Assembly: GCF_006345805.1 (NCBI RefSeq)
Contig: NC_043006.1
Span: 93,868,001-93,932,000, forward strand
Length of the DNA stretch: 64,000 nucleotides
Direction of reading: 5' to 3'
Source: Octopus sinensis
Taxonomy: Eukaryota
Shown piece by piece: positions 1 through 60,506 of the stretch. Numbering within the stretch: the first letter of the stretch is position 1; every line of letters begins with the position of its first letter. Under the pieces are notes generated by a model. That model did not search any database and was not told the origin of the DNA. It saw nothing but the letters and a program-made list of their open reading frames with translations. Position numbers and translations under genes: made by a program.

Positions 1-320
1 AGTTTGATTTTAATTTTTACTTACTACATATAATTCAATTGTTATTATTATTTTTATTGTTAAAGTGAAAGTATCTGACATAAAATAGAGAAACGTTTTT
101 GTTTCACTTTTAACACGTAATACAGAAATAGTGGAGAAGATATGATATTGCTATGGGCTCGCTCTAGGCAAGAAGTTGAACATTTTTTTTGCCCATGAAA
201 CTACATGGAACTTAAGTAAGGCATGTGTAAAATTTGAATGAAATTGCTTGAGTAGTTCTCAAGTTTTAGGAAAACACACAGACAGACAGACACACACACA
301 TTCTCAGTTTTACATATATA
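1..320 (-). mobile_element. Helitron-type 5' end fragment
   Basis: The minus strand reads TATATGTAAAACTGAGAATGTGTG..TCTGTCTGTCTG..AATTTCATTCAAATTTTACAC, the usual layout of non-autonomous Helitron 5' ends. Confidence 0.5.
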
Positions 321-544
321 TACATAAATATATATATATATATACGAGAGATCAATACCTCGAAACTCGAGTCCGTGTGTATCATAAGTTGAAGACGGGA
401 AGGATGACTTCCCTTTGCAAATACTGACAGGACACAGAAAGTGTGTCTATGGCCAGCTGGAGGAGTGTGTCCTCCTGGGGCTAAAAACTACAGTAGCATC
501 CACCCTTAGGGGTTAGCCATATTGAAATGGCAAAAATACGTCAC

Positions 545-546
545 GT

Positions 547-580
<34 letters not shown>

Positions 581-676
581 TATACATACATATATATATA
601 TATACAGACACACACACACAAACACACATATACACACACACATAAAGGTTCTTAATGGTTGGTAGATAGATAGATG

Positions 677-746
<70 letters not shown>

Positions 747-767
747 CAGACAGACATACAGACAGAC

Positions 768-827
<60 letters not shown>

Positions 828-865
828 GGACGGATGGACAGATGGATGGATGAATGGATGGATGG
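545..865. repeat. Compound microsatellite (TA)n/(CA)n/(GATA)n/(GACA)n/(GGAT)n; one of many in the window
   Basis: Directly visible. Similar tracts at about 7370-7860, 8120-8720, 15440-15890, 20560-21480, 21790-22075, 52035-52345 and 60355-60605. Confidence 0.95.
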
Positions 866-1064
866 ATGGATAGAAAAGACTTAGGCCGTGTGTGGTCTCA
901 AAACCATCATGCGTTGAGACAGTCATAAAACTGTAATCATGATGTATAACCATATATACTCATGTTTCAACATACATTAATAACAGCAGGATATCGTTTT
1001 GCAGATCATCACTAACCTGCTTTTTCACATACCATCACTGCATTCTCTCTCTCCCACTCGCTCC

Positions 1065-1132
<68 letters not shown>

Positions 1133-1286
1133 TTTCCATTTATCTATCTATATATCCATACATATATATATATCACTGTGATCGACCAGACTATCAGATG
1201 TTGCTACACATCGCTGGTCACAATGCGCTTCGCATTGTTTTAGCCTTCAAATGACGTCACCCCGCTCGCTAAGCGAGCAGGCCAAT

Positions 1287-1336
<50 letters not shown>

Positions 1337-1404
1337 AATTAATTTACTCTGCTATGTATTGAGTACCTTGTTTGCTGTGGTTAACCCCGACTCAACCCGG
1401 GACC

Positions 1405-1462
<58 letters not shown>

Positions 1463-1850
1463 GAGAGAGAGACAAGATCGAGCAAAGTACTTAGCGGCAG
1501 ATAGAGATGCTGCTAGTTTCAAATTCTACCGAGATCGACTTTGCTTCTCTTCCCTTCGGAATCGATAAAATAAGTGCCATTTGAACTCTGGGATCGATGT
1601 TATTTCCGGCCCTTATAATTTCTGACTTTGCGCCAAAGTTTTGTATCTACAGTTATTGCTCAAGCTTGGGTCTGCTTTGCTGGCCACTGCTATCGAACTG
1701 AAGAGGGGTTGTTATAGTTTGGAGACTTCTAAGCTGTAAGACAAGAATGCACCATATACGACGGCATAAAATGTGTACTAGCATATCAAACGCACTCACA
1801 ATTCCAGTAGCGCATAAGCAGGAGAGAAAAGCGTTTTTATATATTTAAGA

Positions 1851-2246
1851 CTAGCAGTATCGCCCGGCGTTGCTCGGGTTTGTAAGGGAAATAACTATAT
1901 AAGCATTTTTAGAGAGTTATAGCCAAAAAATAACAAAAAATGCATTAAAAATGGAAAAAAAAATTATGGTAATTTTTTTTAAATCGTTGACTCATCGTAG
2001 ACATCTTTAGAGAGTTACTTCCCTTATATAATAGCGAAAAAATGCATTAAAATGGAAAAAAATTATGGTAAATTATTTTTTAAATCGTAGACTCATCGTA
2101 GACGCGCGCTAATACCCAGAAGGGCTCGATATGAATCACGACTATAAGATACCCGGTTTTGGTTACACTGCACCGCAAAATGTGGGAGTAGTTAGGAATC
2201 TAAATCGTAGGAGACAGACACACAACTTCACTTTTATATATAAAGA
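1851..2246 (-). mobile_element. Non-autonomous Helitron (family A), 396 bp
   Basis: Minus strand starts TCTTTATATATAAAA and ends with hairpin CCCGAGCAACGCCGGG plus CTAG. It sits between A and T and has an internal duplication. Confidence 0.85.
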
Positions 2247-2347
2247 TTACGGCCCAGCTCTGCATATAGGACCCGGAGGGAATTTTTTAAGACATTTATT
2301 TGGAAACAAAATGCATCTTACAGTCCCATATTTAAGAGATGAGGAAT

Positions 2348-2493
2348 TATGTACATTGTTTACATTTGACGGATATTTGTCCTCATCTTGTTTCTTGTTA
2401 ACACAACGTTTCGGCTGATGTACGCTCCAGCTTTCATCAGGTGTCTTGGGGGAAATTTCGAACCTGCGTTCTCATTCCTAAGGTATTTTTCGA

Positions 2494-2526
<33 letters not shown>

Positions 2527-2640
2527 ATATGGTCACTGCTTGGAATCGAACTCGGAATCTTGGGGTTAGTACTATGCGCTCTTAACCACTACGCCATATG
2601 CCCGTGGATAAATATCCGTCAAATGTAAATAATGTAAATA
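2348..2640 (-). mobile_element. Composite element: tRNA-like head + (AAT)n + Penelope-type tail with hammerhead motif
   Basis: tRNA-like 2603-2531 (A box TGGCGTAGTGG, B box GTTCGATTCC), then an (AAT)n linker, then GACAC-CTGATGA-..-GAAA-CGTT-GTGTT at 2445-2400. Inverted repeats of 35 bp (32/35 identical) lie at 2348-2382 and 2606-2640. Confidence 0.6.
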
Positions 2641-2996
2641 GAATGCATCTTATATGCCATCAAATTCGGTAAATTTAGTTTCAAACTATGGCGCAATGCT
2701 AGGAATTTTTTAGTGGTGGTGGTGGGGGGCTAGTCGATTACATCGACCCCAGTGTCCAACTGGTATGTATTTCATAGACTCCGAAATGATGAAAATCAAA
2801 GTCGCCCTCGACGCTATTTGAAGTCAGAACGTAAAGACGGACGAAATGCCGCTAAGCATTTTCCCGTCCGCGATAACGATTCTGCCAGCTTGCCGCCCTC
2901 AATTACTATAATATTTGTGTTTACTAATTCGACGGATATCTTTCAATTGTTAATATTTCTCAATGAATTGTTCCTTATCTCTGTTTGTGTTTGCAG

Positions 2997-3140
2997 TCGT
3001 CATAACTTGTTGTTGTATCGATATTCGGATCCCAAGGACCGTCCAGCAAATTGAGAAGACTGATCGAAAGCTGAAACTTAACAAGCAATACATTAAGGAA
3101 CTCAGTAGAGCAGCGTCATCCTCTACACCAGCGCCTCCTG
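2997..3140 (+). CDS. TMIE: Internal coding exon of a TMIE-family (transmembrane inner ear expressed) single-pass membrane protein
   Basis: Acceptor tgttccttatctctgtttgtgtttgcAG and donor G|GTATGT bound a 144-bp phase 1-1 exon. It translates (x)VITCCCIDIRIPRTVQQIEKTDRKLKLNKQYIKELSRAASSSTPAPP(G). This aligns without gaps to human TMIE as recalled ([36 protein letters not shown]): Cys cluster, RxPRT, IE and KxY..L are shared. Confidence 0.8.
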
Positions 3141-3379
3141 GTATGTCAAACATTACGGATGTTGTTGTTGTTATTGTTCTTCTTTTTGTTCCACACTACA
3201 ACTACAGTAGCTGTGCTGCTGCTGCTGCTGCTGCTGCTCTGTAAGAGGTTGTCTCTTCCCTCATTAATGTCGATGGGGACGCGTAAGTTTCTGCGATGCC
3301 TGAAGTTCTATCCTCGACAGCCTCCAGTTCCTCTAACACATCGTACAGCGGACAGAGAAAAGATCTTCCTTTGGTCGGT

Positions 3380-5700
3380 TGCTTGTCTATTTAAATTAGT
3401 CCAAAGCTTCGATAATTAATCAATTATCGATACCTTGCAATTGTCCTAATTACAATGGTTTTCAGAGGCTGGATCATTAAATTCATAGCAAGTTCTGTTC
3501 AGTATTCAAACTAAACCGCCTCTCGGAACCATTTAGCGTCAAATTCCCAATCCAACAAAGATACCCCTCGCCTCCATAAGTTGTATATTTTAGCTCTGGA
3601 GCTTTTGTCACTGAGGGTGGATACTTTGTCAGGCAACCCGATTGAACTGGGCCATAGGAAGGCCATGTTTGTATGCGTTGATGATGCTAACATCATGATG
3701 TCGGGAACTTATGAGATACAAGTGGTTGGCATCATACTTGAAAGTATTCCTGGAGGGTACGGGGCAGACAATTAAAACAAATCGGTTGGCTTACAACTTG
3801 GCCCCTGCAGAAGCCTGTCCAAGATGGTCAACAGCAATTTCTACAGCTGGACCGAGAGTCCGGTTAAAGTGTTTTCAATCTGGTTCGGCCGGAAACCACT
3901 TGAGAGGGTAGGAACTGAGAAAAGTTGGCGAGAAAGGAGAGTGTACTGTCTCATTTAGAAAATGTGCCAAGAGGATTAAGGATCGAATGAAAGTAGCTCA
4001 TACCTGTTTTGCTTCCGGGGGTGAGGGGTTACAGCCTGACCATTTTACTTCGGTCCGAGAAACATTGAAGTGCATGATATCGAAGAAACAGATTTCACTG
4101 GTCGAAGGGTTCATCAGGCTGTTAACATTCGCTCCGTAGTAGTCTTGGAATGTCGACACTGATGAAACGTAGACAGGCTGTGAGACTGACTCTTCTGAAA
4201 AAGTTTCTGGACCATTACAACGGCTGGAACAACAATGAAAATGAAGGCATACTGTGGTGGCTGCATTCGTGTGGCACGTAAGCCCGTTCCTTTAACCGCA
4301 TGCAATCATGGGTCAAATACACATACTGTTGTTGGGTGTTTGGCATCGGCACTCTACCAGGCGAACAATGCTATCGATAGGAAAACAACTTTTGCATTCC
4401 AAAGAGAGTTAGTAGAGGCTATGTGCAACGATGGCGTGGGAAAGATTCTAGGCATTGGCGACAAAAGACAAAAGACTACAGAGAAGTCCTTGGCATGGCA
4501 TTGCTATAGCGATAAATGCATTACTTGTTCGAGATAAGCTCTACAGAGACAGAAGTGCTAACGGCCGAACCTGTCCGAAATGTATGTTGGGTTACAAAAC
4601 CATACTGCAAATCCATCCACAAACTAATTCCACTTCTTACAGTACATTGTAGAAAGAGTGAGTAATGAAACCGGCTTTAGTTGATTATTGATCTTTCTGG
4701 ATTAACCCGGGGCTATGACTAGGGCTGACTATCGATACTTGATGCTTGTTCTCAATGTGATCAGTTTCAGTCCTGTCTTCGGACCTTAAATCGGTTCAAT
4801 GTACAGCACCATCTTGGTGATTATACTAAATGGTCACATATCAAAATCGTTTCTAACCACTCGATTTATTTGTCTTTGGTGTCCGCTACCAGCCGGCCTC
4901 TAAGTGTTGGTTCTTAAAGCCATTGCCCCAGGCACAAAGTGTTGAAGCCACCCATAAGAAAACACCATGCAGGCAGTCCACATATATCAACTACATTAAA
5001 AAGAAACTGGCATTCCGTCGGTTACGACGACCTGGGCCCCAGTTGATCTGATCAACAGAACAGCCTACGTGCAAATGGCTGAGTACTCCACAAACACGCG
5101 TACCCTTAGCATAGTTCTCACAGAGATTCAGCTTGACACAGAGTGCGAGAAAACTGGCCCTTTGAAATACAGCGTACAACCCATTTTCCCCAGTTGAGTG
5201 GTCTGGAGCTACATGAAATAAAGTGTCTTGTTCAAGGACACTGCGAGCCGTCGGGATTCAAACTCATGACCTTGTGATCCTGAGCTGAATACCCTAATCA
5301 TTAAGCCACTTCTTCCCTTCACATCAACTGCATAGCGGTAAAGGTGTCCTGTGAATAGGAATAGATTGGTAACACACAAGAAATACGAAAGAGCGAGTTG
5401 TGTTGCCCTGTCTTGTAACTTCTGCGAAGACACTTGTGTGGGGGACAAGAGTAGAAGGTTTCAGGATGGTCTTCTTTTTTTCCTTTAAGGCTAAGACCTT
5501 CTCAATCCCTTAAGGATCGTTTGAAGAGAAAGTTGAGTGTAGAGAGCAAAATGTACCCTCCAGAAAGTTTCGTGAAAGTCAGGAGTAAATGGTAAAACCG
5601 GTGCAGTTAATTGACTCTATTCTATGTAGCTGTAAGCTGGCGGCATATCTTCGAGAAGGCCTTAATGGTTGGTGTGTCAAAAGTGTCATGAATAGCCCTA
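3380..5700 (+). mobile_element. Decayed Tx1/L1-clade LINE ORF2 fragments (two RT pieces, zinc knuckle, C-terminus), interrupted by a SINE
   Basis: Broken frames give YILALE..CVDD (YADD-equivalent, about 3580-3690), VRDKLYR..TCPKC (about 4520-4590), a second RT piece DYRYL..LNGHISKSF..CPL (about 4720-4900) and C-terminal LKRKLSVE (about 5515-5560). Confidence 0.75.
4985..5322 (-). mobile_element. tRNA-derived SINE, family C (core GTCCTTGARCAAGACACTTTATTTCA)
   Basis: Head, core and tail match copies at 13085-13368(-), 37530-37780(+), 54790-55045 and 58350-58520(-). Confidence 0.75.
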
Positions 5701-5775
5701 TGTTTAGGGGGAACCCTTTCTTGTTTTTCATCTTTATGTTTTCTATGCTGCATTACTAATTATTATTGTTTATAT

Positions 5776-6350
5776 ATGAAATAAAAATATTCTCAGTAAA
5801 GAAACCCACCAATACATAGTTGGCATAATCCCACTGATGCGGGTGGATCTCCTTGGGTTGGGTATGACGAGAAACTTCGAGCGACCAAAGACTATTCTGT
5901 CCATGGAGGGCACTTGCTTTCACCTGACTGTCGGTTTTGACCTACAGGGTATGCTTGGAGTCGTGTCATCAACTCTAACCGTTTTCGCTACAGTGACCCG
6001 CTTAATCACAAATTGACAGGAGGAGAGCGATTCGCTCGTTTGTCTCACTTTCCCCTCCAACTAGAACTTGAAAATGTCGCTGCGGTTTTTGCGAAAGAGG
6101 AGAGTGTTTGACCTCAACCTCGTCCACCTCGTCCACCACACAATCTACTATGTATCGTTCCAAGACAAAGGAGGACAGGGAGACGATCTTCACGGTGAAC
6201 TTGGACGATAGCTGTCCTTCGCGCTCTACAAGCGTTGAACATAATTCCACGAGTCATCGATGTTTAGACACTGAATGATTTCTCGCTCTGTTCGAACATT
6301 CTTAACGCGTGGGTCCGTTGCTCTGCGAGCATCTCAGAGGGTATCACCAG
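5776..6350 (+). mobile_element. Probable LINE ORF1-like remnant; left arm of an inverted duplication
   Basis: Coding-like composition with stops, next to LINE ORF2 debris. 5776-6046 is copied in inverted orientation at 6881-7134. Confidence 0.3.
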
Positions 6351-6390
6351 ATCAATGACTTTTTGTATAGGCACAAAGCTAGAATTTTCT

Positions 6391-6431
<41 letters not shown>

Positions 6432-7802
6432 CGCATGAGAGAGAGAGGTTGGGGAGGGTGACAGTTATGTTTTGCTGGATACAAGGGCCAAAGACACCGA
6501 AGATACTACGAAGGCAGAATACTAAAAGAAGTAAAAAAAAAAAAGGACTAAAGCAAAATAACCAGTGTGGGATTTACAATAAGAAAAAGGGCGAGATTAA
6601 TAATAATAATAATAATATTGCTTCTTAATTGACTAAACTCTGAGCCATTCATGTCATTGCTATGCCTGTCTATTTCTGTATGCCATATGACTGAAAACCA
6701 CCACTTAGCTGTTATTTCTACATTTCTGAACTTCCTTGCATAGATTACTTCATTCAACTAGATTCTACACTTTGATTATGTTTCAACAACCAATTAATAA
6801 AAAATATCTTTATGTAGTAAATATGTAGTTCTTAAATTTATTCTTCTTCTTTGTAAGAATTCTTCTAAGAATATACACACAGACAAACGAGCGAATCGCT
6901 CTCCTCCTGTCAATTTGTGTAGCGAAAACGGTTATAGTTGATGGCACGACTCCAAGCATACCCTGTAGGTCAAAAGCGACAGTCAGGTGAAAGCAAGTGC
7001 CCTCCATGGACAGAATAGTCTTTGGTCGCTCGAAGTTTCTCGTCAGACCCAACCCAAGGATGTCCACCCGCATCAGTGGGATTATGCCAGCTATGTATTG
7101 GTGGGTTTCTTTACTGAGAATATTTTTATTTCATTTTTTTTCTTCTTTTTATGTAAATCCCACCCACCAACGCAATGTATAACCTGTCACTGTAATGTCC
7201 ATTTAAACTGAATCCCCAGTGCCAATTAAATGAAGTCGTCGTCGTCATCATCATCATTTTTTTATTTGCTGCACAATTCAATTCTATTCTCTTTCTTGCG
7301 TTTAGGACGTGTGACAAGCAACAGGAGGGAAACACAGAGATGAACCACAGGAAAATGGGGAGCAAGGAGGATCACACACACACAAGCACGTACACACACA
7401 CACACACACACACTCGTACGGAAACACAAGCAAACACACACATGTACCAGCGCTTAGATAAAAAAAAATGCTCATACACACATATGCACTCACCGACACA
7501 CATACACCCACTATATACATACACATAAATAACACTATATACACATACATACATACTATATACATACACTATATATATACACATAAATAAGCACATATAC
7601 ACAGAAACATATACAAACACATATACTAAGTCATACACATACACACTCTTAAATATATGCACATACACACACACACCTACATTCACACAGGCACACGTAA
7701 CGCACAAAAGTACACACATGCGCAAGCACATATATACACCCGCATGCATACACATATACATCAAAGCACATGCACCCAAACTCATTTATACATAACACGT
7801 GC

Positions 7803-7840
<38 letters not shown>

Positions 7841-8132
7841 AACTATATATGCATGTATATGTGTGTGTATGATTTTTGGAAGTGGGTGATTATCGGCGAG
7901 TCTTTGCATGCATGTGTGTATGGATGTTTATTTGAACATGGACAGCATCATGTGAAAGACAAATCACGTGACAACAAAAAAAATGCAGAAAATAACAAAA
8001 TAAAATAATATTCATTGTCAAAGGGATTAAAGAAAAAATAATTCAAGGTATTTATTTGGTCATTTTATTTTTTTATACATATACATACATATATGTGCGC
8101 GCGTGTATATATATATGTGTATATATATATAT

Positions 8133-8193
<61 letters not shown>

Positions 8194-8488
8194 TAAATAA
8201 AACATATGCATATATATAAACATATATGTACGTACCTACCTCTACATGTACATATACATGCATATATGAGTACAGGACACCAAAAAGACGTCGAACACAA
8301 CGAGAAACGAAAACATAGACACAAACCCAAGGAACTGGACATTTTTTTAAACAACAAAAAAATAGACTACAGGACAATTAACACAAAGAAAAAAACCCCT
8401 TCTTCAGTCGCTATGGTTTCATCTACTCTACGTTTCGAAGGTGAAAGCGAGACGTATCTTCGACAAGAAACTTTCCTTCCTGCGAAAA

Positions 8489-8564
<76 letters not shown>

Positions 8565-8656
8565 TATATATATGTATGCATATATATATATATATATATA
8601 ATATATATATATGTATGCATATATATATAAATATATATATAAATATATATATACAT

Positions 8657-8705
<49 letters not shown>

Positions 8706-10329: not shown

Positions 10330-11150
10330 GCCAATCTGGATTAAAAAATCGATAAAAAATCACTCTTCTCAATTGAAAGGTGTGGCCTTTAGGGCAAAAT
10401 TCCTCATCTTTTAAAATGTGGCCCGCGTAGGCCCGAATGAAATCGGGTTATAATACCGAAACAAATAAAACAATGATAAACTATTTTAATCGCGAGCAAC
10501 CGCATCTTTCCAGATGGTGAGTTTTAACCTACTCAACTCTCTGCCTCATTACGCCTTGTATGCCCTGTGTCAATTCTCAGCTCGATCCGACCGCTGGTCT
10601 GGCTGCCAACCTCTCACTTAGCAAAATGTGCACACAATTCTGACCCAAAGCCTCTTTTATATATATATAGAAGCAGAGAAACCCGGTCTTGCTCGGGATT
10701 AAAATAGTTTATCATTGTTTTATTTGTTTCGGTATTATAACCCGATTTCATTCGGGTCTACGCGGGCCACATTTTAAAAGATGAGGAATTTTGCCCTAGA
10801 GGCCACACCTTTTAATTGAGCAAACTCAAAGTTGCTATGCAAACTCGCCAGGACTTTTAACATAATTGTGCAAATTTTCAGCTCAATCCGACCATATTTA
10901 CTGACACTTTTGCCAGTATAATTGCTTGTGAGACAACGTCCACTCTTTTCACGAATATGTAGTAGACTGACAGAGATACCCGGCCTTTCTTGGGATTAAA
11001 ATAGCATAGGTTTTCATTGTTTTACTTGTTTGATTAATATAACCCGATTTCATTCGGGTCTACTCGGGCCACTTTTAAAAGATGAGGAATTTTTGAGGAA
11101 AAAATAGCTGCCATGCAAACTCGCCAGCATCTTTTCAGCTCAATCCGCCC
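10330..11150. mobile_element. Nest of Helitron fragments (three copies of one 3' region, one inverted)
   Basis: 10368-10496 is the reverse complement of about 10690-10819 (4 mismatches in about 130 bp); a third copy lies at about 10975-11095. A head-to-tail junction TTTTATATATATATAGAAGCAGAGAAACCCGGTCTTGCTCGGG occurs at about 10655-10697. Confidence 0.65.
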
Positions 11151-12608: not shown

Positions 12609-13849
12609 TGTGTGTTTCTGTTTGTTTCCTCTGCGACGGAAAATCGCTGCTGATATGTGTACAGTCCCAGAAAATTTTCGCTCCAGCTACCAAAAGAAAT
12701 TTGTTCAACTAAAGCATTGAAGGTGTTGCCCCAGTATGGCCCCAGTCAAATTACAGTAACAAAAGAAAAGAATAAAATACTTATATTAAATAAATATTGA
12801 GAACGGTAGCGGAAAGTTGACTGGGATTTGCAAAGAGTCACCTCCCGTTAATTATTATAAAAGAGTTGTTGCCCCTGAAATATTTGGCTGTAAATTAATC
12901 AGCTGTGTTGAAAATTCGGACTTTGTTACAACCGTTTGTATGTGTGAACGGGGACTGAATGTCTTCGTGTGTAAGAGTGAGTATATGTGTCGATGTGTAT
13001 ATGTGTGCGTATGTGTTGTGGTATTAAAAATATATTTGATAGATTGTTGTGACTCCCTTCGGTCATGCACCTAGAAAGTTACCGTCCGAGGCACAAGTCT
13101 GGGCAAGGTTTATTTTTTATGGAAGACCAGCTGTCGCCCAAGCATATCAGCCTCCCCCTCTCCATGTCACCGATGTTGTCCAAGGGAAAGGCAAAGGGGC
13201 CGATACCGCTTGGCACCTGTGACGTCACAACTCATTTCTACGGCTGATCGAACTGGAGCAACGTGAAATAAAGTGTCTTGCTCATGAACACAACATGCAG
13301 CCTGGTCCGGGAACCGAACTCACAACCTCATGATCATAAGCTCGACGCTCTAACCACTGAGCCATTTGATAAATTAGTGAAGAAGAAAAGTATATTATAC
13401 AATGCAGTATAAGCGCAGGCGTGACTGTCTGCTAAGAAGTTTGCTTCCCAGCCATACGGTTCTGGGTTCAGTCCCACTGCGTAGCACATTAGGTAAATGT
13501 ATTCAACTATAGCTTTAGGCCAACCAAAACCTTGTGAATGGGTATGGTTAGCACGCCGGGTAAAATTGTGAACACGCAGGGCAGATTGCTTAACGACATT
13601 TCGTCCTTCTTTACGCTCTGAACTCAAAGGCAGCAGGGGTTGACTTCACCTTTCGTCCGTTTCGGGGTCGATAAAGAGGTATAAGTTGAACACTGGGGTC
13701 AATGTGATCGATTTACCCCTGACCTGAATTTGCCAAAATTCCAAACTAATATCTGGTTGATTGGCCTGTCTAGATCAAATACAGCAACCCCTTAACGTTG
13801 CCGTTAACCCACCATCTTGGGACGGTACTATATTTATCTGACCCAGAAA

Positions 13850-14073
13850 GGCGGCGAGCTGGCAGAAACGTTAGCACGCCGGGCGAAATGCTTAGCGGTA
13901 TTTCGTCTGTCGTTACGTTCTGAGTTCAAATTCCGTCGAGGTCGACTTTGCCTTTCATCCTTTCGGGGTCGATAAATTAAGTACCAGTTACACACTGGGG
14001 TCGATTTAATCAACTTTATCCGTTTGTCTGTCCTCTCTGTGTTTAGCCCCTTGTGGGTAGTAAAGAAATAGGT
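13850..14073 (+). mobile_element. tRNA-derived SINE, family B (Meta-domain-like core)
   Basis: GGCGGCGAGCTGGCAGAAACGTTAGC head, B box GAGTTCAAATTCC, core GCCTTTCATCCTTTCGGGGTCGATAAATTAAGTACCAG. Other copies at about 2700-2900(-), 13555-13740(+), 26270-26420(-), 33170-33400(+), 39652-39812(-), 41399-41610(+), 42650-42858(-) and 53780-54130(+). Confidence 0.8.
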
Positions 14074-15777
14074 ACTATATTTATCTGACCCAGAAAGATA
14101 AAAAGCTAAGTTGACTTCGGGGACGATCTGAACTCAGAATGTAAAGGATCAGATTGCAATGTACTTTCTTTGACGCCCTAACACAGAGGTTCTCAAATCG
14201 AGGTACGCAGGAGAAATTTTAGGGTTACACAAAGCTTGCAAAAGAAAGCAAAAATGAACTTTTAAAGCAGTCATAATTCCTGACTTTTTGGTTAAGAAGC
14301 TTTCTTTGCAACTACAGCGTTTTGGGTTCAGCCCCATCTTAGGCAAGAGTCTTCTATTACACTCCCGGACCGACTGATAGCTCGTGAGTGAATTTGGTAG
14401 ACGGAAATTGTGTGGAAACTTGCCGTACAAGTGCATGTTCCCCCCCCCCACACACACACACACACCGCTTGACTACCGGTGTTGGGTCGTTTTCTTCTCC
14501 ATAAACTAGCACTACGGCAAAAGAAAACCGATAGAATAACTACCAGATTTAAGAAAAAAAAAATAATAAGTATCGCGATCGATTTGTTCGCCTAAAGCTT
14601 TCAAGGTAGTACCCCAGTATGGTCGCAATCCAATGACTGAAACAAGTAAAAACTAAAATACAAACGATAAGTAAATGTAGATATATTCGGAAAATGTGTG
14701 CAGAATCTTTTGACGTTGTTCTCTGCTAATTGTTACGAAAAGAGGCTTTCAGCGATGTTTATAAGCGAAAACAAATTTCGTGCAGAGAATGTTTATGCGG
14801 ACGTTTCTCTCTCAAACGATGACATTGAATTAAATAAAATTAATTTACTCCATATTCAGAAGGTCGAAAATTCAGTGACAGGAAACAATCGATTACATCG
14901 ATCCAGAATTTGAATGATATTCGATTTTATCGACATTAAAAAGTCGAAATCGAACATGACCGTGGCAGAAGTTTAAGTCTTAAATAAATTAAATTAAACG
15001 CCAAATAATACATGTATGTTGTCTGATCTGTGGTATCCAACTATTTGCACTGTAGTCTTCCCACAGGGTACGCCAACATTGTCGGACGTAAAGGGGTACG
15101 CCGGAAAGGTACTTCACTTTATCGAAGGTCGAAAGACTAACTTGACCTAGGGCCAAATTTATAGGGGTGCGGAGAAGGCAATTGCCTCGAGCATCTGATA
15201 ATACTGAGGCCTCTCTGCTACGAAGGGTATGTAGCACTCAATACCGGTAGGCCTCCACATCCCAGCAATCAGGCATGAAGAGGCTCTCTTTCAATGTACA
15301 AAGATATCTTTACTTCTTAAAAAACGTGATATATGATTCCCTTTTAGGATAAATAATCATTGGTTTTGCCACCTTAGAGACATCAGTTAATTCAATTAAG
15401 AAGCACCCATGACAGAGAAAAGGGCAACTCTTGAAGATGTATGTACGTATGTATGTATGTATGTATGTATGTATGTATGTATGTATGTATGTATGTATGT
15501 ATGTATGTATGCATGTATGTATGTATGCATGTATGTATGTATGTATGTATGTATGTATGCATGTATGTATGTATGTATGCATGTATGTATGTATGTATGT
15601 ATGTATGTATGTATGTATGTATGTACGAATGTGTGTATGTATGTATGTATGTACTACGTATGTGTGCGTGTGCGTGCGTGTAAGTATGAATGTATAATAA
15701 AGGTACAGAGATTGAGAGAAAGTAGTTATCGTGTCTCGCTCAGATTCCTTGAACTTGGCTTGACCGATCAGTTAAAG

Positions 15778-15876
<99 letters not shown>

Positions 15877-17313
15877 TACACACACACGTACATTTCTACT
15901 TTTAAACTTATTTCAGTGAGGCATTGAAAACTGGTCTTATTTTATGAAACAAGTTTCAATTTCCTGTTTTTTGTCGGGATTTTCCCCGATTTTTTTTTTT
16001 TTTTTGCAAAATAACAAAGGGAAGAAGAATTTTTAAAAGAAGAATTTTTAAAATCCATGTCTTTTAAATGTCAGTGTTTCCACCCATCCCCCCTCTCACG
16101 CACGCACAAATGCACGCACACACTCTCATCATGTTTTTGGAACAGCAACAATCACAAAAATGATTTTTTTTTTTATTTTTCGTAATTTTCCGTCATTTTA
16201 TTTTATTCCCACATTCTGAAACATTTGTTTCAAACTCGTATTAAAAGAGAAAAAATCTTACCCTGCTTTCCCACTTCTTTTCACAATAAAGGAAAAGTCA
16301 AGCACTTCAAGTAGATGAGTAAAAACCGAAATTTGAATTTTGAAATAGTGTATCTATAAAGCGACATTTTCAGTCATTTATTTAAAATTTCTCTGCTAAC
16401 TCATCCAATTCAATTATATGTAAAAAAAAAAACAGGGTTTGAGATTTAAATTTGGTAATTTTCAAAGATTTTTATTCATGTGTATAAGGGGCCCACCACT
16501 TTGCCGCCCACCCTTGGTTTAAATCCGGTCCTAACTTGACCAAAGCAGAATTTCAACTCTTAAATTAAACTGAACTAATTATCAAATAATAAATGTCTGT
16601 TGTCCGTTCTCTGCTATTTAACCCCTTTCACTGCATAATTCCATCAGGGGAAACCAACACTGACAAACATAATAAAGGAGGGACTTCTGAAAGAAAAGTT
16701 TTACGTCTAAGGAGGCTGGCGCCTTTCAAGGGAAGCAACTCCCGATAATTTAAATGACACTTTCTTTGATGACATTTATTTCAACTGTCTTGAAGGTGAT
16801 TTGAGATAAACGAGTGAAGGTCATTTAATCAGTTAATAACATCCAAAATCTGATGCTTGTTCGGGTTCACTTCATTCAATAACCATCAACATTTGTCTGT
16901 TGCATGAGAGAAACTTATTCCTGTTTCGAATTATGTGTTGAAACCTATCTGAGGAGGTCGCCATCTTGTTTACATTTAGCTCAAAGAAACAGCAAGGGAG
17001 ACACTAACCTATAACTAGACCTGCTAAAGATAGCAACCAAATTCCTCCCAAATCATATACACTTAGCACATCCTTGTGGATGTAGGCCATCAACGACTTC
17101 TTTTTCCCACACTTTTCATTTCTGGGCCTCTCTCTTTTACTTCTCTCCACTTCGATCCCCGATTTTTCAGCTCTGTTAGAGGGGGGTAGTTGTGTATGTA
17201 TTACAGAAAAGAGTCGCTTTTGTGCAAAGTTAAGCAGATATCACAATAGAGAAAACTAGAGATATGTTCTATTACAAGTTTTTATATTAACGCTCTACAT
17301 TTATCTGTGGAGC

Positions 17314-18509: not shown

Positions 18510-18876
18510 CTCCATTTTATCTACTTCATTTCTTAATTATTTCTAATCTACATATCAATGTCGCATTACTACTAGCAATTACCAGAAACAACCACCACCA
18601 GAATAGCAGCAATTAACACTGACACAACCAACACCATCGCCGCCATCACCCCACCACCACCACCACCACCACATTGTATTGTTATCTTTCTTCTGGTTCT
18701 AAAGTGTCTTGATCCAGATTTCTGATAAGAACTTTTGACTTTCACCCATGTTATCTGCCAAATTAAAGTTACAACAACAACAACATTGATAATGACGACG
18801 ACGACGATGATGATGATGATTTCTTTGACATTTTTAAATCTTATTTTTAAACGACGATGACGAGAGCGGCGGCGGC

Positions 18877-18914
<38 letters not shown>

Positions 18915-18929
18915 CGACGACGACGACGA

Positions 18930-20150
18930 TTTACAAACAAGAAAATGTCCCCCTCCCCCCAAAGGAAGGGATATCCAATGACTGCGCTCACAAAACTACG
19001 GTCACCCTGATTGCTAGAGTGAGTGTCCTTTCTTCGCCCTTCCCTCTCAACCCCTGCTCAAAGCAGGCCCGTTTGTATCTACCATTCTTGTTATTCTCAG
19101 TCACCGTTCAACAAATTTGCTGGAAGACAGCAATCTCTTATTCATCTTTTTTTTTTTCAAATGGAACTTGAAAAAGGTGATGAGGGCTTGGCCAAGGAGG
19201 AAGGTGCCTGTCTTCAGACCTTCTAATCTGATCCACCACACAAACTCTTTCACTAAAGCCACCAGACAGATAAACACTGCTTGCTGATGGTTGGCTGCGT
19301 CAACACCCGCTTAGCTAATTCACTAATCCGGCCTCTATAAGCTTGGCGTACCGGGAATGGCATGTTCAGCTTCCAGTAACCCTATCTATTTCTACAAAGC
19401 TGATCTAGGTCGATCGTACAGGTCACGAATTTGTGATTTGTGTATCCGGCGGTTATAAAATGTGGGCAACATGTGCTATCCTTATCTTCTGGTTAACAGA
19501 ATACTCTACCTAGATACAACCTAAATGAACCGATATGGCTAGGTCAAGTCCACATGGCACATCCGAGAAATCCAGTCGGTATCTGTCAGACGATTGGAAA
19601 CGTCGCTGCAGGTTTGTGATGGAATTGCACCCTTCTCCCCTCAGTTAGACCCGTATACTTCAAACATACATTTAAGATAGTATTCTAGTACAAAAGAATG
19701 GGATGTTCCTAGGAAAACCTCCAAACGCCTGTAGAAATCCAGATGTCCCCACTAGCGGAGCATAAACACTTACTACTAACCTGAAAACATCCGCTTCGCT
19801 ACTGCTCGCATCCAGGACCACAAGTTTATTTTCTGAATCCAAGAATCTTGAGATTCAGACCGTTCCGACACAACATCGCAGATCCACCTTCCATTCCCAG
19901 TTGACATGGAGATAAGTAAATCTCGTATCCACATGAAGGCTTGTGGATCGGAAACTCTGATCTCGCAGATGGCCATCACATATATTTAATTGCTTGTGAT
20001 GATTAAGTAGGTAACCCTGCTTCTAAGGGCGACTCCAATCAACGTGCGTTTTCACTGCCTATTCTGAGCACAGACATACTTTACAAGAAGGAATGAGAAA
20101 AAGAGTCACTAACTTTATTCCTATGAAAGGACATGCTAGCATCGACGACC
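18930..20150 (-). mobile_element. Internally deleted Tx1/L1-clade LINE (APE endonuclease joined to ORF2 C-terminus)
   Basis: Minus-strand frames: FRLVVSVYAP; YLGRVFC..CPHFITAGYTNHKF..GYWKLN; then directly VFICLVALVKEFVWWIRLEGLK..FFKFHLK. No RT motifs between them. Confidence 0.75.
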
Positions 20151-20428
20151 AATTCTTTAGGTAGTCTTTTGTTTATATTAGACTGTGAGATCGTTCACAT
20201 CTTTAAGGTATTTGCTTTTTAAAATGTATGCGTGTTGCAAAATTTGGATAATTCTTATGTGTTGTGGAATACTGCTGGTTAATGTAATTTAGTTATTGTG
20301 TGTCATGCTTGTATTTTGGTATGTGTGACCCATTAGTTTTATATTATCTGTGTCTGTCCTTGTTTGTCTCCTCTGTGTTTAGCCCCTTGTGGGTAGTAAA
20401 GAAATATAAACACACACACACACACACA

Positions 20429-20482
<54 letters not shown>

Positions 20483-21610
20483 CATTTTCGTCTGTCGTTA
20501 CGTTCTGAGTTCTGTATTCGCGATTTCTTTTCCCTCTCTCCCTCTCTCCCCTCTTCTCTCTCTTTTGTTCGTGCTGTTGTGTGTGCGTGAATTCGGTCAT
20601 GCTTGTGCTTGTGATGATGGTGACTGTGGTAGTAGTAGTTGTGGTGACGAGAAGGGCTGTGTTGTTAATGCGGATGTAGATGCTGTTGGGGTGGGTGGTG
20701 GAGTTGCTTGAAAGCACTCCCCCCACCACCACCATTTGTTCGTAGTAGACGTAAAAACTGTGTGGAAGCCCGTCGTATATGTGTGCATGTTTAGCCCTCC
20801 ACCGCACCATCACCCCCGCACACATACATCCTGACAACCGGTGTTGGTTTGTTTACAGCTCTGTAACCTAGTGATTAGGCAAAAGTGAACGATGGGATGA
20901 CTAAACGCTTCAAGATGGTGCTCCAGTATGGTCGCAGCCCAATGAGTGAAGCAAGTAGAAGATAAAAGAGAACACACCAATATCAAAATCACTACTACTA
21001 CTACTACTAATAATAATAATAATACCACTTTTGATACTATCACAGTAAGCATTGACACTACTACTACAACTACTATTAATAGTACCACCACCATCAGCAC
21101 TACAACAACCACTGCGCTACCACCTTTACCCACGCAACTGCTGCAACTACTACAACCACCACCAACTACTACTACAACCACCACCACTACTACTACAACC
21201 ACCACCAACTACTACTACAACTACTATAACCCTCTACGACTTCTATTACACTACTACCACAAACATCGCCTCAACCACCGCCATCACAATCATCTTCCCT
21301 CGAGCAACACTACCACCATCATCACCAACCAACACCACCGCCACCGTCAATACCACCACCACCACTGCCACCGCCACCTCGGCCGCAGGCACCTCTACCT
21401 CCCCACCCACCTCCCACCAACCCACCAACCCACCAACCCACCAGCCAGCCAGCAACAACGTCATACGTCACTCGAAGTTCTAAGCTGACCTTTCCCCGGC
21501 ACCGCCAGTGACATATTTTCCAGGTAAGACGAATGTCAATTTTATATTTATATTATAAGGATTTGGCTCCGTGTTTATGGTTTTTATGCATATATTTGCA
21601 ATTATATACG

Positions 21611-32699: not shown

Positions 32700-33495
32700 T
32701 CTTTTATCTGTTACTTTTCCAGTAATTGGACTGCGGCCATGCTGGGGCACCGCCTTGAAGAATTTTTACTGGAATGAATTGACCCAGGTCTTTTTTGTGT
32801 CTGGTGCTTATTCTAGGAGCTGCGGAACCACTAAGTTACGGGGACGTAAACAACACCGATTACCAAGCGGTGGTAGGGAACAAGCACAGACACAAAGACG
32901 CACACGCACACACACAAAGACATACTTATTAGCAATGCACCCCGGCGTTGCTCGGGTGTTATGACCGACAGCCACATTGTATTATTTGTTTCTTTCTTAT
33001 GGGCAGATTCGGCATACGAGGAGTATGAAGCAAATAAATCTTCTTTATGAACATGTTTTTCGGTCATTTTCTGATGAACAATGCTGCAGTTTCCGTCTAC
33101 CAAATTCAGTCACGTGTCTGCGGTTTGCCTAGGGCTATAGTAGAAAACATTTGCCCAAGGTAGCGAAAGGCGGCGAGCTGGCAGAAACGTTAGCACGCCG
33201 GACGAAATGCTTAGCGGTATTTCGTCTGCCGCTACGTTCTGAGTTCAAATTCCACCGAGGTCGACTTTGCCTTTCATCCTTTCGGGGTCGATTAAATAAG
33301 TACCAGTTACGCTCTTGGGTCGATATAATCGACTTAATCCGTCTGTCTGTCCATGTTTGTCTCCTCTGTGTTTAGCCCCTTGTGGATAGTAAAGAAATAA
33401 GAAAACATTTTCCCAAGGTACCATGCAGAGGGACTGAACGTAGAACCATGTGATTATGAAGTAAACTTCTCAACCACACAGTCAGTCTTGTACCT
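32700..33495 (-). mobile_element. CORE-type SINE with nested Helitron 3' end (about 32927-33085) and family B SINE (33170-33400)
   Basis: SINE tail, core and head are recognisable around the inserts. The motif TTAGCAATGCACCCCGGCGTTGCTCGGG is at 32927. Confidence 0.65.
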
Positions 33496-38108: not shown

Positions 38109-39951
38109 TATGTATATATATATATATAGTTAATCCAAACATGAAAGCACAAAGAGAAAACACAACGCGAGGACGTTGAACAAGTATAGTGTTAATGGAC
38201 GCTCAGGAAAGGAAAGAAAGGAGGATTTAACGTTTCGAGCGGAGCTCTTCGTCAGAAACATAGGAAAAGGAAAGATCCAAGGAAGGGAAGACGGAGGAAA
38301 AAAATCGCCAACGATACACACGCGGTCATCCGAGAGGATGAAATGCAGAGTCGACGTCGGAAGCATTTGAATTCAGAACATGAAGAACCGAAAGAAATAC
38401 CGCTAAGCGTTTTGTCCAACGCGCTAACGATTCCGCCATGGAAAAATAACGTTTCTGCCTTTCTTAACACAAACAGGCTTTCAGAGTATGCTCAAAGGTG
38501 CAGTTAAAGGAAGTCATGATATAGTGTCTGTCAGTCGGAACAGGACAATGGAAGTGTGTGCCTAGTTTTCGAAACTAACGTAAGGGAAGAAAATGGGCAG
38601 AGCTGGTTTGGCTGGGTTCCAAATACGTTGGAGGAAAAAACACAGGGATTAAGAGAGAATAATTGCTTGTAGTCAGGTTTTCCCTAACTCTTTTGTTACT
38701 TTTGTTGTGTTGTAGGAAGAAGTAGAGAGTAGCGAAGTGACTGCAAATGAGATTTGGTCGGATAGGTCTTTATGCAAAAGTAAGTCTTGATGACTGTTGA
38801 AGACTACGGAGCCATATCGCATAAAGTCCAGCCGTTACACGTGTAGTAGTAAGAATTGTTAAAGGATTTCGTTCCTAAAAGGAGTAAAAGCAGATGAGGA
38901 GAGATAGTAGTGAACAGCTGCAGAGACTGTAGAGAGAAAAGGTTCTGAAAGCTTCCTGGTCATGGCTTCTTAAACGGTGGATTAAGAGCAGATTAACCAG
39001 AAGCTAACGACCAAGAAGTTGAGGACAAAGATACTGAGTCACCACCCACCCCACGCAACCCTTTACCCACTTCTACCGATTCCTCGTCTTACAGAAAAGA
39101 AATGAAGAAAGTTGGGGAAATTGGAAACGAAAAAGTTGTTAAGAAAGAAAAAGAACAAACCAAACGGAAGGAATGTGGAACAAACAAATATCGGTTTACC
39201 CGTTTTCCAGAAGAAACCAAGATGAAGAAGCCCGCCTATTCTTTGGAAGCTATGAGGTTTGCAGCGGTGCCATCACAAAATGAAGATTTCAGGGACTTCT
39301 TGAAATACCTGCAGGAGAAGAATGGGATTGCTGGTGCGTGAAGAGATGAAGGCAGAGTTTAAAATGCACACGAAGGACTGACTTCAGGTGAAAACCCTAA
39401 CAAAAGTTTTCCATGAGCTATCAGGAATATGAAGGCCCCTTCCTGCCAAATTCCACAGCTGAACTGCTAACAATCACATATGAGAAGCCACTTCACTTCG
39501 TGTACAAAGGATTTGTTCATAGTAATTGATGTAGGAAGCCCTGATGCGAGTCGGGGGGGCATCTCCAGTGTGGGGATCTGTTTCATTATTTCTTTTCTTG
39601 TTTCTTGTTTAAATAACGTCTGCCTCAATTGCATCTTGTTTATACCTATTTCTTTACTACCCACAAGGAGCTAAACACAGAGGACAAACAAGGACAGACA
39701 CGGATATATCGATTATATCGACCCCAGTGCGTAACTGGTACTTATTTAATCGCTCCCGAAAGGATGAAAGGCAAAGTCGACCTCGGCGGAATTTGAACTC
39801 AAAACGTAACGGCTTGTTTATCTTGCCGTTTCTATAACAAAGTGTTGTCATATTGTTCAATGGGTATTACTACTGGTTCAACTGCGTTTATGTATATATG
39901 AACCTTGCAAGGACTGTGCAATCAAAGATGACTTTTATTTTTTACTTGCAG

Positions 39952-47669: not shown

Positions 47670-48018
47670 ATATATATATAACCTAGTTGAGAACCCCTTT
47701 CAATGTCTTCTCCAAAGACAGTTACAATTGCAGTCCTATCTTATTTGTTGCTATAAAAAAAAACTTTATAGACTTCAAATGAATCTGGATATAATTACCA
47801 TCATTGTTATTGCGATTTAAATAATTGAGTCCGAAATAATAACATCAACAACAACAACAGCATTAATAATAATTGTTTTCATTTGGGGCACAAAGCCAGA
47901 TATTAAGAGGGGAGAGGAATACGGTTACATTGATCCCAGCGCCTGACTTGTAGTTATCTTACCGACCCCTTAATGATGAAAACCAAAGTTAATCACGGCA
48001 TCAACTACTACTAATACA

Positions 48019-48158: not shown

Positions 48159-49024
48159 ATGGGTTCTAAATTTTGGAAAACTGTTAAAAAGATCCAAATT
48201 GCCACTGGCGTTCATCCTTACAGAAATTTAGATTTGGAAAATATAACCTTACCGATCCTGGATATGGAATTTCGTTACATATCACGTAACGACGGACAAA
48301 AAGAGTTGGTTGGCAAGGGCACATACGGCCGAGTCTACCTGGGTCGCTGCAAAGGGATGCCGAGCTTGGTAGTAGTGAAATGCTTCAAGAACAAAGACAT
48401 GAAGGAAATTTGTGCCGAAGCTAAAATTATGAGCCATTTATCAGAAACAGGGGTGGTGCCGAAATGTTTCGGTTTGATCCAGGATGAAAATTCAGAAATA
48501 CAACCGTGCTTAGTTCAAGAATATTTCGGACAAGGTGTTACCCTTTCAAAATTTCTCTGTGATTTGCGTGTTACGCTTAAGAGCAAAAATTGTATAGGTA
48601 TCTGTTTGCAACTTTCTCGGGGATTAAAGAAAATACACGCTCAAGGCATTTTATTAAACGATATTAAAACTGATAACATACTTATAGATCGATACACTAT
48701 CGATTTTCAAATTCGCTTTATAGATTTTGGGTGTGCTAGCACCTTGAAGGAATATCGTTTGATATTTCGGAAAGTGAAAGCTGTTACCATGTTGCCCCCG
48801 AGGTCAAAGCAAAACAACCAACCAGTACTTCGTCGGATGTGTTCAGTCTGGGTCATGTCTTTGATGCAATTCAGGACCTGATGCGGGTGGAATGTCTCGT
48901 TCCCCTCGTGAACAGCTGCACTATGGACAACCCTAAAAAGCGCACCAGACTTCAAGATCTCGTCGAGGATCTCAAATCTCTTCACCACGAGATATTTTAT
49001 AGAGAAATGAGAAACTGGGATTAA
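48159..49024 (+). pseudogene. Intronless Ser/Thr-type protein kinase with one frameshift (pseudogene or sequencing indel); about 288 aa if one base is restored
   Basis: ORF 48159-48881 has GKGTYG, VVVK, alphaC Glu (AEAKIM), catalytic loop LLNDIKTDN and DFG. A shifted frame continues with CYHVAPE, SDVFSLG and subdomain XI Arg (NPKKR), ending TAA at 49022-49024. Adding one G at about 48749-48750 gives DFGCASTLKGISFDISESESCYHVAPE. Start context is ACAATGG; AATAAA lies at 49201. Confidence 0.85.
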
Positions 49025-52314: not shown

Positions 52315-52345
<31 letters not shown>

Positions 52346-60352: not shown

Positions 60353-60403
60353 ATACACACACACACACATATATATATATATACATATATATGTATATAT
60401 ATG

Positions 60404-60478
<75 letters not shown>

Positions 60479-60506
60479 ACGTATATATATACATATACAT
60501 ATATAC

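What the first reader, a model, noticed from the sequence alone, without database searches (positions are those of the whole stretch)
2997..3140. Cephalopod TMIE-like exon retaining residues that matter for hearing in vertebrates
Seen: a clean phase 1-1 exon encoding VITCCCIDIRIPRTVQQIEK. Established: vertebrate TMIE is part of the TMC1/2 hair-cell mechanotransduction complex and is also an nAChR auxiliary subunit; human R81 and R84 are DFNB6 mutation sites, and the juxtamembrane Cys pair is a reported lipid-modification site. By ungapped alignment from memory, R81, R84 and the Cys pair are kept here while R92 is not, and the upstream intron seems to fall at the same codon and phase as human exon 3. 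Inference: a candidate component of statocyst or lateral-line-analogue hair cells, or of cephalopod nAChR-derived receptors.
Basis: partly seen in the sequence, partly recalled or inferred. Interest (0 to 1): 0.72.

Follow-up and report, generated by a model that had tools for sequence, protein, structure and literature searches.

The report
Octopus TMIE gene exon, confirmed
The flagged 144-base stretch is a real coding exon of the octopus counterpart of TMIE, a small helper protein of touch and hearing channels. The gene is already predicted in public databases, though unnamed, so this is a correct but fairly ordinary find.

Summary
Window 2997-3140 (+) is an open exon in phases 1-1, with a pyrimidine-rich AG acceptor and a GTATGT donor. 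Its 47 codons pass Pfam's TMIE model on their own (39.5 bits against a cut-off of 27). It is the only TMIE-like piece in the six-frame translation of the window (E=1.5e-18; next best 0.86).

The window is identical to Octopus sinensis CM016868.1. The exon is already part of RefSeq XP_036362873.1, "uncharacterized protein LOC118765236", which carries a precomputed Pfam TMIE hit. An O. vulgaris model also contains it.

- The palmitoylated Cys pair is kept.
- Both elbow arginines (human R81 and R84) are kept.
- The R92 equivalent is Thr.
- The upstream intron splits the same codon in the same phase as human intron 2 (c.211|c.212).

The most likely function is an auxiliary subunit of a TMC-type mechanosensory channel. 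The tissue (statocyst, epidermal lines) and any role with nAChR-like receptors were not tested. Both ends of the public gene models look unreliable. I rate it a new member of a known kind, of modest interest.

The parts
1..2996 (+). 3' part of the intron that precedes the exon. The whole intron is 7,513 nt. Its 5' end and the transmembrane-helix exon lie about 4.5 kb upstream of the window.
   Evidence: window position 1 = L001 18282; the upstream exon is L001 13626-13764 and ends ...ATCGTCA|GTAAGT.
2732..2900 (.). Copy of a roughly 170-bp dispersed SINE-like repeat inside that intron, ending 97 nt before the acceptor. It is not part of the coding sequence.
   Evidence: 11 further matches to it in the window at 71-84% identity, some of them partial.
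2970..2996 (+). Polypyrimidine tract and AG acceptor (gttccttatctctgtttgtgtttgcAG).
2997..3140 (+). TMIE coding exon, phases 1-1. It encodes the cytoplasmic end of the transmembrane helix, the CCC motif, the RIPR elbow and a basic cytosolic helix.
   Evidence: AlphaFold model: helix 95-116, break 117-124, helix 125-151, with 10-residue block pLDDT means of 76-93 between residues 91 and 150.
3008..3016 (+). Three Cys codons (TGT TGT TGT). The first two align to C. elegans C43/C44 and mouse C76/C77, the palmitoylation sites.
   Evidence: C114 and C115 are invariant and C116 is kept in at least 90% of 13 TMIE proteins.
3026..3037 (+). R-I-P-R elbow. The two Arg codons, at 3026-3028 and 3035-3037, are equivalent to human R81 and R84 (worm R49 and R52, which hydrogen-bond to TMC-1 TM6 and TM8).
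   Evidence: both are invariant.
3059..3061 (+). Thr codon (ACT) at the position of human R92, so that residue is not conserved. The worm has Ile there.
3141..7305 (+). Intron 3 of the public model (4,165 nt): GTATGT donor, tttAG acceptor. It contains a 91%-identical inverted repeat pair at 5776-6045 and 6881-7134.
7306..7343 (+). Terminal coding exon of the RefSeq model: (G)RVTSNRRETQR followed by TGA. It rests on the gene model alone and is not conserved in other molluscs.
   Evidence: No conserved C-terminal motif was found in the window.

Best explanation
Window 2997-3140 is the third coding exon of the Octopus sinensis orthologue of TMIE (RefSeq LOC118765236, named only 'uncharacterized protein').

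The protein is a small single-pass membrane protein. The exon encodes the inner end of the membrane helix, the Cys cluster that is palmitoylated in worm and mouse TMIE, the R-x-P-R 'elbow', and a basic cytosolic helix.

By homology it most likely works as an auxiliary subunit of a TMC1/2/3-type mechanosensory channel. The two elbow arginines would hydrogen-bond to the backbone of TMC TM6 and TM8. The acyl chain(s) on the Cys pair would lie along the pore-lining helices. The basic helix would sit on the inner leaflet, possibly binding phosphoinositides. Together these would tune channel gating.

Shown here: the exon, its junctions in a public model, family membership, conservation of the key residues, and the conserved intron position. 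Inferred: the partnership with TMC, the lipid modification, and the cell types in which it acts.
For: - Exon anatomy and translation.
- Pfam TMIE above the gathering cut-off for the exon alone (39.5 bits) and for the whole model (65.7 bits).
- Unique hit in the six-frame window, E=1.5e-18.
- Window identical (0 mismatches over 17,343 nt) to O. sinensis CM016868.1. The exon is used by XP_036362873.1 and, with 100% amino-acid identity, by O. vulgaris CAI9727473.1.
- Ungapped alignment to the solved C. elegans TMIE (7usw_D, E=7e-9) places W96, C114/C115, R120 and R123 on W25, C43/C44, R49 and R52.
- The roles of those worm and mouse residues are published: R49/R52 hydrogen bonds and their equivalence to R81C/R84W, and C44 palmitoylation; the C76S/C77S mutant abolishes TMIE stimulation of TMC2.
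- C114, C115, R120, P122 and R123 are invariant among 13 mollusc and insect TMIE proteins.
- The predicted fold is a transmembrane helix, an elbow and a cytosolic helix, as described for worm TMIE.
- The intron sits at the same codon and phase as human intron 2.
Against: - No expression or splicing data could be consulted. The junctions rest on canonical signals and on a computational RefSeq model.
- The octopus tail lacks the lysine clusters of vertebrate TMIE, which form its second PIP2-binding region.
- The terminal exon is not conserved in other molluscs.
- The RefSeq N-terminus has no signal peptide and its first exon looks spurious.
- No octopus TMC was examined here.
- The Foldseek search of the model against the PDB gave nothing, which is expected for such a simple helical fold.
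Confidence: 0.85

Rival explanations
1. The same TMIE orthologue acts mainly, or additionally, as an auxiliary subunit of nicotinic-type receptors. These could be neuronal or hair-cell nAChRs, or the nAChR-derived chemotactile receptors of octopus suckers. This would parallel vertebrate TMIE with the alpha9alpha10 nAChR.
For: A review of the vertebrate work describes TMIE as an auxiliary subunit of the alpha9alpha10 nAChR that takes part in channel gating. The juxtamembrane region is conserved. That octopus chemotactile receptors derive from nAChRs rests on my own knowledge and was not checked here.
Against: Nothing in the sequence speaks for this over the TMC role. All the conserved residues are explained by TMC contacts in solved structures. 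No paper in the searched library links TMIE to cephalopods.
Confidence: 0.1
2. It is a TMIE orthologue that works with TMC channels broadly in neurons and muscle, setting excitability or proprioception as reported for ecdysozoan Tmc123 genes. It would not be a dedicated 'hearing and balance' hair-cell component.
For: Ecdysozoan Tmc123 paralogues function in proprioception, locomotion and egg-laying control, and nociception. The family is widespread in invertebrates that lack vertebrate-type ears.
Against: This refines the site of action rather than offering a different molecular mechanism. No expression data were available either way.
Confidence: 0.4
3. It is a decaying or unexpressed relic: an exon-like open frame that is no longer part of a functional gene.
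For: The public models disagree at both ends. The first search, with the 47-residue peptide, found no candidate. The word-indexed search with P0001 returned only P0001 and the O. vulgaris model P0002. The introns are crowded with repeats.
Against: The frame is intact and both splice sites are canonical. The transmembrane exon upstream is intact and in matching phase. Every family-invariant residue is retained. The exon has 100% amino-acid identity in O. vulgaris, whereas the read-through into the following intron already differs.
Confidence: 0.04

Closest known systems
Human and mouse TMIE (DFNB6 deafness gene; auxiliary subunit of the TMC1/2 hair-cell transduction channel)
   Same: Same Pfam family. 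The Cys pair, the R81 and R84 equivalents and the W57 equivalent are conserved. The phase-1 intron falls in the same codon, ten codons before R81. There are probably four coding exons, as in human (inferred).
   Different: The R92 equivalent is Thr. There is a third Cys (CCC) where, by my recollection of the human sequence, human has Val. No lysine clusters are present in the tail. The predicted tail is short and of a different sequence. Identity outside the transmembrane-elbow core is low.
C. elegans TMIE in the solved TMC-1 and TMC-2 complexes (PDB 7usw, 7usx, 7usy, 8tkp)
   Same: A 51-residue ungapped alignment at E=7e-9 covers the transmembrane helix, CC, the RIPR elbow and the start of the cytosolic helix. 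The predicted helix-elbow-helix architecture is the same.
   Different: The cytosolic helix and the tail diverge in sequence. No octopus complex or TMC partner has been shown.
Mollusc and insect TMIE-family proteins (for example Liolophura XP_064614067.1, Batillaria KAG5698770.1, Trichoplusia ni 'transmembrane inner ear expressed protein')
   Same: They share the VCCCVDxRIPRT(K/R)QEIE core at 40-50% identity. Open frames from genomic contigs of other species diverge exactly at the exon's two ends, which suggests the same intron positions (inferred).
   Different: Gastropod and chiton proteins have long His/Gln-rich tails ending in a conserved ...GV(Q/H/K/R)TP(F/L)... motif. No such motif exists anywhere in the 64-kb window.

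Membership tests
TMIE (Pfam PF16038) | Sequence matches the family profile above the curated gathering score. | tested here: met
   Exon alone: 39.5 bits against a cut-off of 27, E=5e-10. Whole model P0001: 65.7 bits. Independent non-octopus profile: E=1.5e-18, the only hit in the window.
TMIE (Pfam PF16038) | A single membrane helix followed by an 'elbow' linker and a cytosolic helix. | tested here: met
   AlphaFold model: helix 95-116, break 117-124 (IDIRIPRT), helix 125-151, with 10-residue block pLDDT means of 76-93 between residues 91 and 150. This matches the description of worm TMIE. The outer part of the helix is encoded outside the window.
TMIE (Pfam PF16038) | Juxtamembrane Cys pair (palmitoylation site: worm C43/C44, mouse C76/C77). 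| tested here: met
   Octopus C114/C115 align to worm C43/C44 and are invariant in 13 homologues. Their role is published. The modification itself cannot be tested here.
TMIE (Pfam PF16038) | Two elbow arginines (human R81 and R84; worm R49 and R52) that contact TMC TM6 and TM8. | tested here: met
   R120 and R123 align without gaps and are invariant. The equivalence to R81C/R84W is published.
TMIE (Pfam PF16038) | Trp at the outer membrane boundary (human W57, worm W25). | tested here: met
   W96 of P0001, in LRIWH, aligns to W25. It is encoded by the upstream exon at L001 13626-13764, outside the window.
TMIE (Pfam PF16038) | Positively charged C-terminal tail (lysine clusters in vertebrates, a second PIP2-binding region). 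| tested here: inconclusive
   The exon peptide has 9 Lys/Arg in 47 residues and the model's tail GRVTSNRRETQR has 4 Arg. There is no lysine cluster like that of human residues 123-131 and 150-154. The terminal exon is supported only by the gene model.
TMIE (Pfam PF16038) | N-terminal signal peptide or first hydrophobic segment. | tested here: inconclusive
   The RefSeq N-terminus has none, and its first exon is antisense to a transposase-like fragment. The first exon of the O. vulgaris model (MEFSRILELVPMISYVSLQFVW...) is present unchanged in O. sinensis with a GT donor and could provide one. No signal-peptide predictor was run.
TMIE orthology with vertebrates (gene structure) | Phase-1 intron in the codon ten residues before the first elbow Arg (human c.211|c.212). 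| tested here: met
   Human intron 2 is fixed by the variants c.211+3G>C and c.212-2A>C, and R81 is c.241. In octopus the codon is split A|TC, ten codons before R. The alignment is ungapped between W and R through the worm sequence.
TMC-channel auxiliary subunit (functional class) | Physical association with, and gating modulation of, a TMC1/2-type channel. | not testable with these tools
   This needs co-expression, pull-down or electrophysiology. Only the contact residues are shown to be conserved.
Hair-cell mechanotransduction component (functional class) | Expression in mechanosensory hair cells (statocyst, epidermal lines). | not testable with these tools
   No RNA-seq or in situ data were accessible. 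The literature searches found nothing on cephalopod TMIE.

The most novel reading that the evidence does not exclude
Octopus TMIE, a short-tailed form without lysine clusters, doubles as an auxiliary subunit for the cephalopod-specific nAChR-derived chemotactile receptors of the suckers. That would link the touch (TMC) and taste-by-touch (chemotactile receptor) machineries through one shared helper protein.
Probability: 0.05. Interest if true: 0.75.

Novelty: new member of a known kind. Interest (0 to 1): 0.3.

Why it matters
The molecules that turn movement into electrical signals in cephalopod statocysts and epidermal lines are essentially undescribed. My searches found no paper on TMIE in any cephalopod.

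An intact TMIE orthologue that keeps every residue known to touch TMC channels, and even keeps the human intron position, gives a concrete handle. It can serve as a probe for in situ work, a partner for expressing octopus TMC channels, and a marker for asking whether cephalopod and vertebrate hair cells share an ancestral transduction complex.

It is not surprising, however. TMIE is an old bilaterian family, and the octopus gene already sits in RefSeq and UniProt with a TMIE domain hit. The practical gains are a proper name for LOC118765236 and a warning that both ends of the current gene models need correction.

Tried and rejected
- The word-indexed homologue search with the 47-residue peptide found no candidate. 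With P0001 it returned only P0001 and the O. vulgaris model P0002. With a mollusc alignment it reached molluscs and insects but no vertebrate TMIE. The human numbering was therefore bridged through the solved worm protein and the literature, not by a direct alignment.
- I looked for a better C-terminal exon, using a regular expression for the gastropod/chiton GVxTP(F/L) motif and tblastn of eight mollusc tails against the window. Nothing turned up. The RefSeq terminal exon could be neither confirmed nor replaced.
- The Foldseek search of the AlphaFold model against the PDB gave only chance matches. The fold is too simple and the N-terminus has low confidence.
- Rfam at gathering thresholds found no RNA family in the window.
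- I tried to identify the species of the transcript-like Logan contig SRR8281663_5241, which encodes a complete 153-aa TMIE. Nucleotide comparison with the octopus locus and a literature search for the run accession both gave nothing.
- I considered and rejected a chance open frame and a pseudo-exon.

Full report
**What is in the sequence**

One search shows a pyrimidine-rich tract ending in AG at 2995-2996 and an open stretch from 2997 to 3140. A GTATGT donor starts at 3141. The 144 bases read as two bases (TC), 47 codons and one base (G), so both flanking introns are phase 1.

**Is it more than chance?**

The 47 residues alone match Pfam PF16038 (TMIE) at 39.5 bits (cut-off 27, E=5e-10), covering profile positions 27-64 without gaps. 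They also match the C. elegans TMIE chain of PDB 7usw.

As a window-wide control I built a profile from twelve mollusc and insect TMIE proteins, with no octopus sequence. I searched it against all 2092 stop-to-stop pieces of the six-frame translation. The only hit was piece 2954-3241 (+) at E=1.5e-18, and the next best was 0.86. The exon is unique in the window at the DNA level.

**Where the window comes from, and what is already annotated**

An exhaustive search of 1.84 billion representative proteins found two proteins containing the 47 residues at 100% identity:
- XP_036362873.1, "uncharacterized protein LOC118765236 [Octopus sinensis]" (P0001, 169 aa).
- CAI9727473.1, "Hypothetical predicted protein [Octopus vulgaris]" (P0002).

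Both carry a precomputed Pfam TMIE hit.

The contig that encodes P0001 is CM016868.1 of assembly GCA_006345805.1. The window is identical to it, with 0 mismatches over the 17,343 overlapping bases, and window position 1 equals L001 18282. If the locus has the record's orientation, the window is 93,868,001-93,932,000 of that record.

- The preceding exon (L001 13626-13764) ends ...ATC GTC A|GTAAGT, so the split codon is A|TC, Ile.
- After 3140 the model continues at window 7306 (tttAG|GA CGT GTG...), giving Gly, then RVTSNRRETQR and TGA at 7341-7343.

So the exon is real in the sense of an independent gene model. It is not new to databases. Only its name is missing.

I could not retrieve a vertebrate TMIE with the homologue tools. 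I therefore bridged through the solved worm protein.

P0001 residues 91-141 align without gaps to C. elegans TMIE residues 20-70 (E=7e-9).

The TMC-1 complex paper states four things:
- Worm R49 and R52 hydrogen-bond to backbone carbonyls of TMC-1 TM6 and TM8.
- These two arginines map to the human deafness mutations R81C and R84W.
- Worm W25 corresponds to human W57.

A 2025 study equates worm C43C44 with mouse C76C77. It shows that C76S/C77S abolishes TMIE's stimulation of TMC2.

Applying the fixed offsets gives these equivalences:

| Octopus residue (P0001) | Window codons | Equivalent |
|---|---|---|
| W96 | outside window | human W57 |
| C114, C115 | 3008-3013 | the palmitoylated Cys pair |
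| R120 | 3026-3028 | human R81 |
| R123 | 3035-3037 | human R84 |
| T131 | 3059-3061 | human R92 (worm has Ile) |

In an alignment of 13 mollusc and insect TMIE proteins, C114, C115, R120, P122, R123 and I128 are invariant. W96, C116, I121 and Q126 are kept in at least 90%. The third Cys, which makes CCC, is the usual mollusc and insect state.

**Intron position**

The TMIE review lists c.211+3G>C and c.212-2A>C as intron-2 variants and c.241C>T as R81C. Human intron 2 therefore lies after the first base of codon 71, ten codons before R81. In octopus the intron lies after the first base of an Ile codon, ten codons before R120. The alignment from W to R is ungapped. The position and phase are the same.

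Open frames predicted from genomic contigs of other species (P0003, P0004, P0008) lose similarity exactly at the start of the exon. P0003 also loses it at the exon's end, after ...STPKPP. This suggests, by inference, that both introns are shared among molluscs.

**Structure**

An AlphaFold model of P0001, built with the 13-sequence alignment, gives a helix at 95-116, a break at 117-124 (IDIRIPRT) and a helix at 125-151. The 10-residue block means of pLDDT between residues 91 and 150 are 85, 91, 77, 76, 93 and 90. That is the 'transmembrane helix, elbow, cytosolic helix' described for worm TMIE. The N-terminal 90 residues have low confidence. A Foldseek search against the PDB found nothing meaningful.

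**Problems with the gene models**

Most of this lies outside the finding but is relevant to it.
- P0001's first exon (L001 10001-10132) lies antisense to a transposase-like fragment and encodes no signal peptide.
- P0002 starts with MEFSRILELVPMISYVSLQFVWNVESTEKQ. That sequence is present unchanged in O. sinensis at L001 11011-11100, followed by GTAAAT. However, P0002 then reads through introns on both sides of the exon.
- Joining 11011-11100 (ending in phase 0) to 13626-13764 (starting in phase 0) would give four coding exons, intron phases 0/1/1 and about 136 residues. Human TMIE has four exons, and its intron 1 is apparently also phase 0 (c.93|c.94, derived). This is an inference, not a result.
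- At the 3' end, the terminal exon has no counterpart in other molluscs. Gastropod and chiton proteins end with a conserved GV(Q/H/K/R)TP(F/L) motif that occurs nowhere in the window.
- A transcript-like Logan contig of unknown species (L002) encodes a complete 153-residue TMIE. It has a signal peptide, an uninterrupted TM-CC-RIPR junction and a short tail. Short-tailed TMIE forms therefore do exist.

**Mechanism**

The best-supported reading is that this is the octopus TMIE orthologue and that it serves as an auxiliary subunit of a TMC1/2/3-type channel. The elbow arginines would anchor it to TM6 and TM8. Acylated cysteines would insert next to the pore helices. A basic helix (9 Lys/Arg in the 47 residues) would face the inner leaflet. 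The residues are shown; the interactions are inferred from the worm structures and the mouse mutagenesis.

The vertebrate lysine clusters that form a second PIP2-binding region are absent. Any lipid regulation through the distal tail may therefore differ.

Where the protein acts is open. A role in statocyst and epidermal-line hair cells is plausible. Ecdysozoan Tmc123 genes work in proprioception, locomotion control and nociception, so a broader neuronal or muscle role is equally possible. A role with nAChR-type receptors, as for vertebrate alpha9alpha10, is an untested extra possibility.

**Novelty and verdict**

TMIE is a known, widespread bilaterian family. The octopus gene is already predicted and carries the domain hit, but it is unnamed. 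I found no paper on TMIE in cephalopods.

The finding is a correct reading of raw sequence, confirmed in every testable detail. It amounts to a new member of a known kind. Interest is 0.3.

Noticed in passing
window 48159-49024 (+): An intronless 240-aa ORF encodes the N-terminal part of a protein-kinase domain (Pfam Pkinase 76.7 bits, profile positions 4-151 of 263). The nearest solved relatives are STE20/MAP4K-type and MAP3K5 kinases. The rest of the domain (…DVFSLGHVF…) continues in a different frame from about 48788. This implies a frameshift: a pseudogene or retrocopy, or an assembly error.
   Followed up: partly
window 61464-61985 (-): A 173-aa ORF with a Pif1 helicase 2B domain (52.3 bits). 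It is probably a fragment of a Helitron-type or Pif1-like helicase element.
   Followed up: partly
window 2732-2900, with further matches at about 13564-13719, 13850-14015, 33169-33334, 39709-39809, 41395-41561, 42686-42856, 47922-47989, 53776-53891, 54038-54080, 57728-57892 and 58918-59087: A roughly 170-bp dispersed SINE-like repeat, found on both strands at 71-84% identity. Some matches are partial, as short as 44-116 nt. One copy ends 97 nt upstream of the TMIE exon's acceptor.
   Followed up: partly
window 5776-6045 and 6881-7134: A 91%-identical inverted repeat pair of about 270 bp, roughly 840 bp apart, inside the intron between the TMIE exon and the model's terminal exon. The ORFs across it have no Pfam match.
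   Followed up: partly
L001 10001-10132 and 11011-11100 (8.2 and 7.2 kb upstream of the window start): The first exon of the RefSeq model is antisense to a transposase-like fragment and has no signal peptide. The signal-peptide-like first exon used by the O. vulgaris model is present unchanged in O. sinensis with a GT donor, and would join in frame to the transmembrane exon. Both public models therefore look wrong at the 5' end.
   Followed up: partly
window 3213-3238, and many stretches elsewhere (for example 500-950, 7370-8700, 15400-15900, 18600-21500, 51950-52560, 60240-60720): Dense microsatellites and low-complexity tracts, including (GCT)n just after the exon's donor, (TA)n, (CA)n, and ATGT/TATG-type arrays that create long spurious ORFs. 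No Rfam family reaches its threshold anywhere in the window.
   Followed up: no
L002 (Logan SRR8281663_5241, 1106 nt): A transcript-like contig of unknown species encodes a complete 153-aa TMIE with a clear signal peptide, CCR instead of CCC, and a short tail. Over the 47-residue exon peptide it was the most similar non-octopus protein in the search (56% identity).
   Followed up: partly
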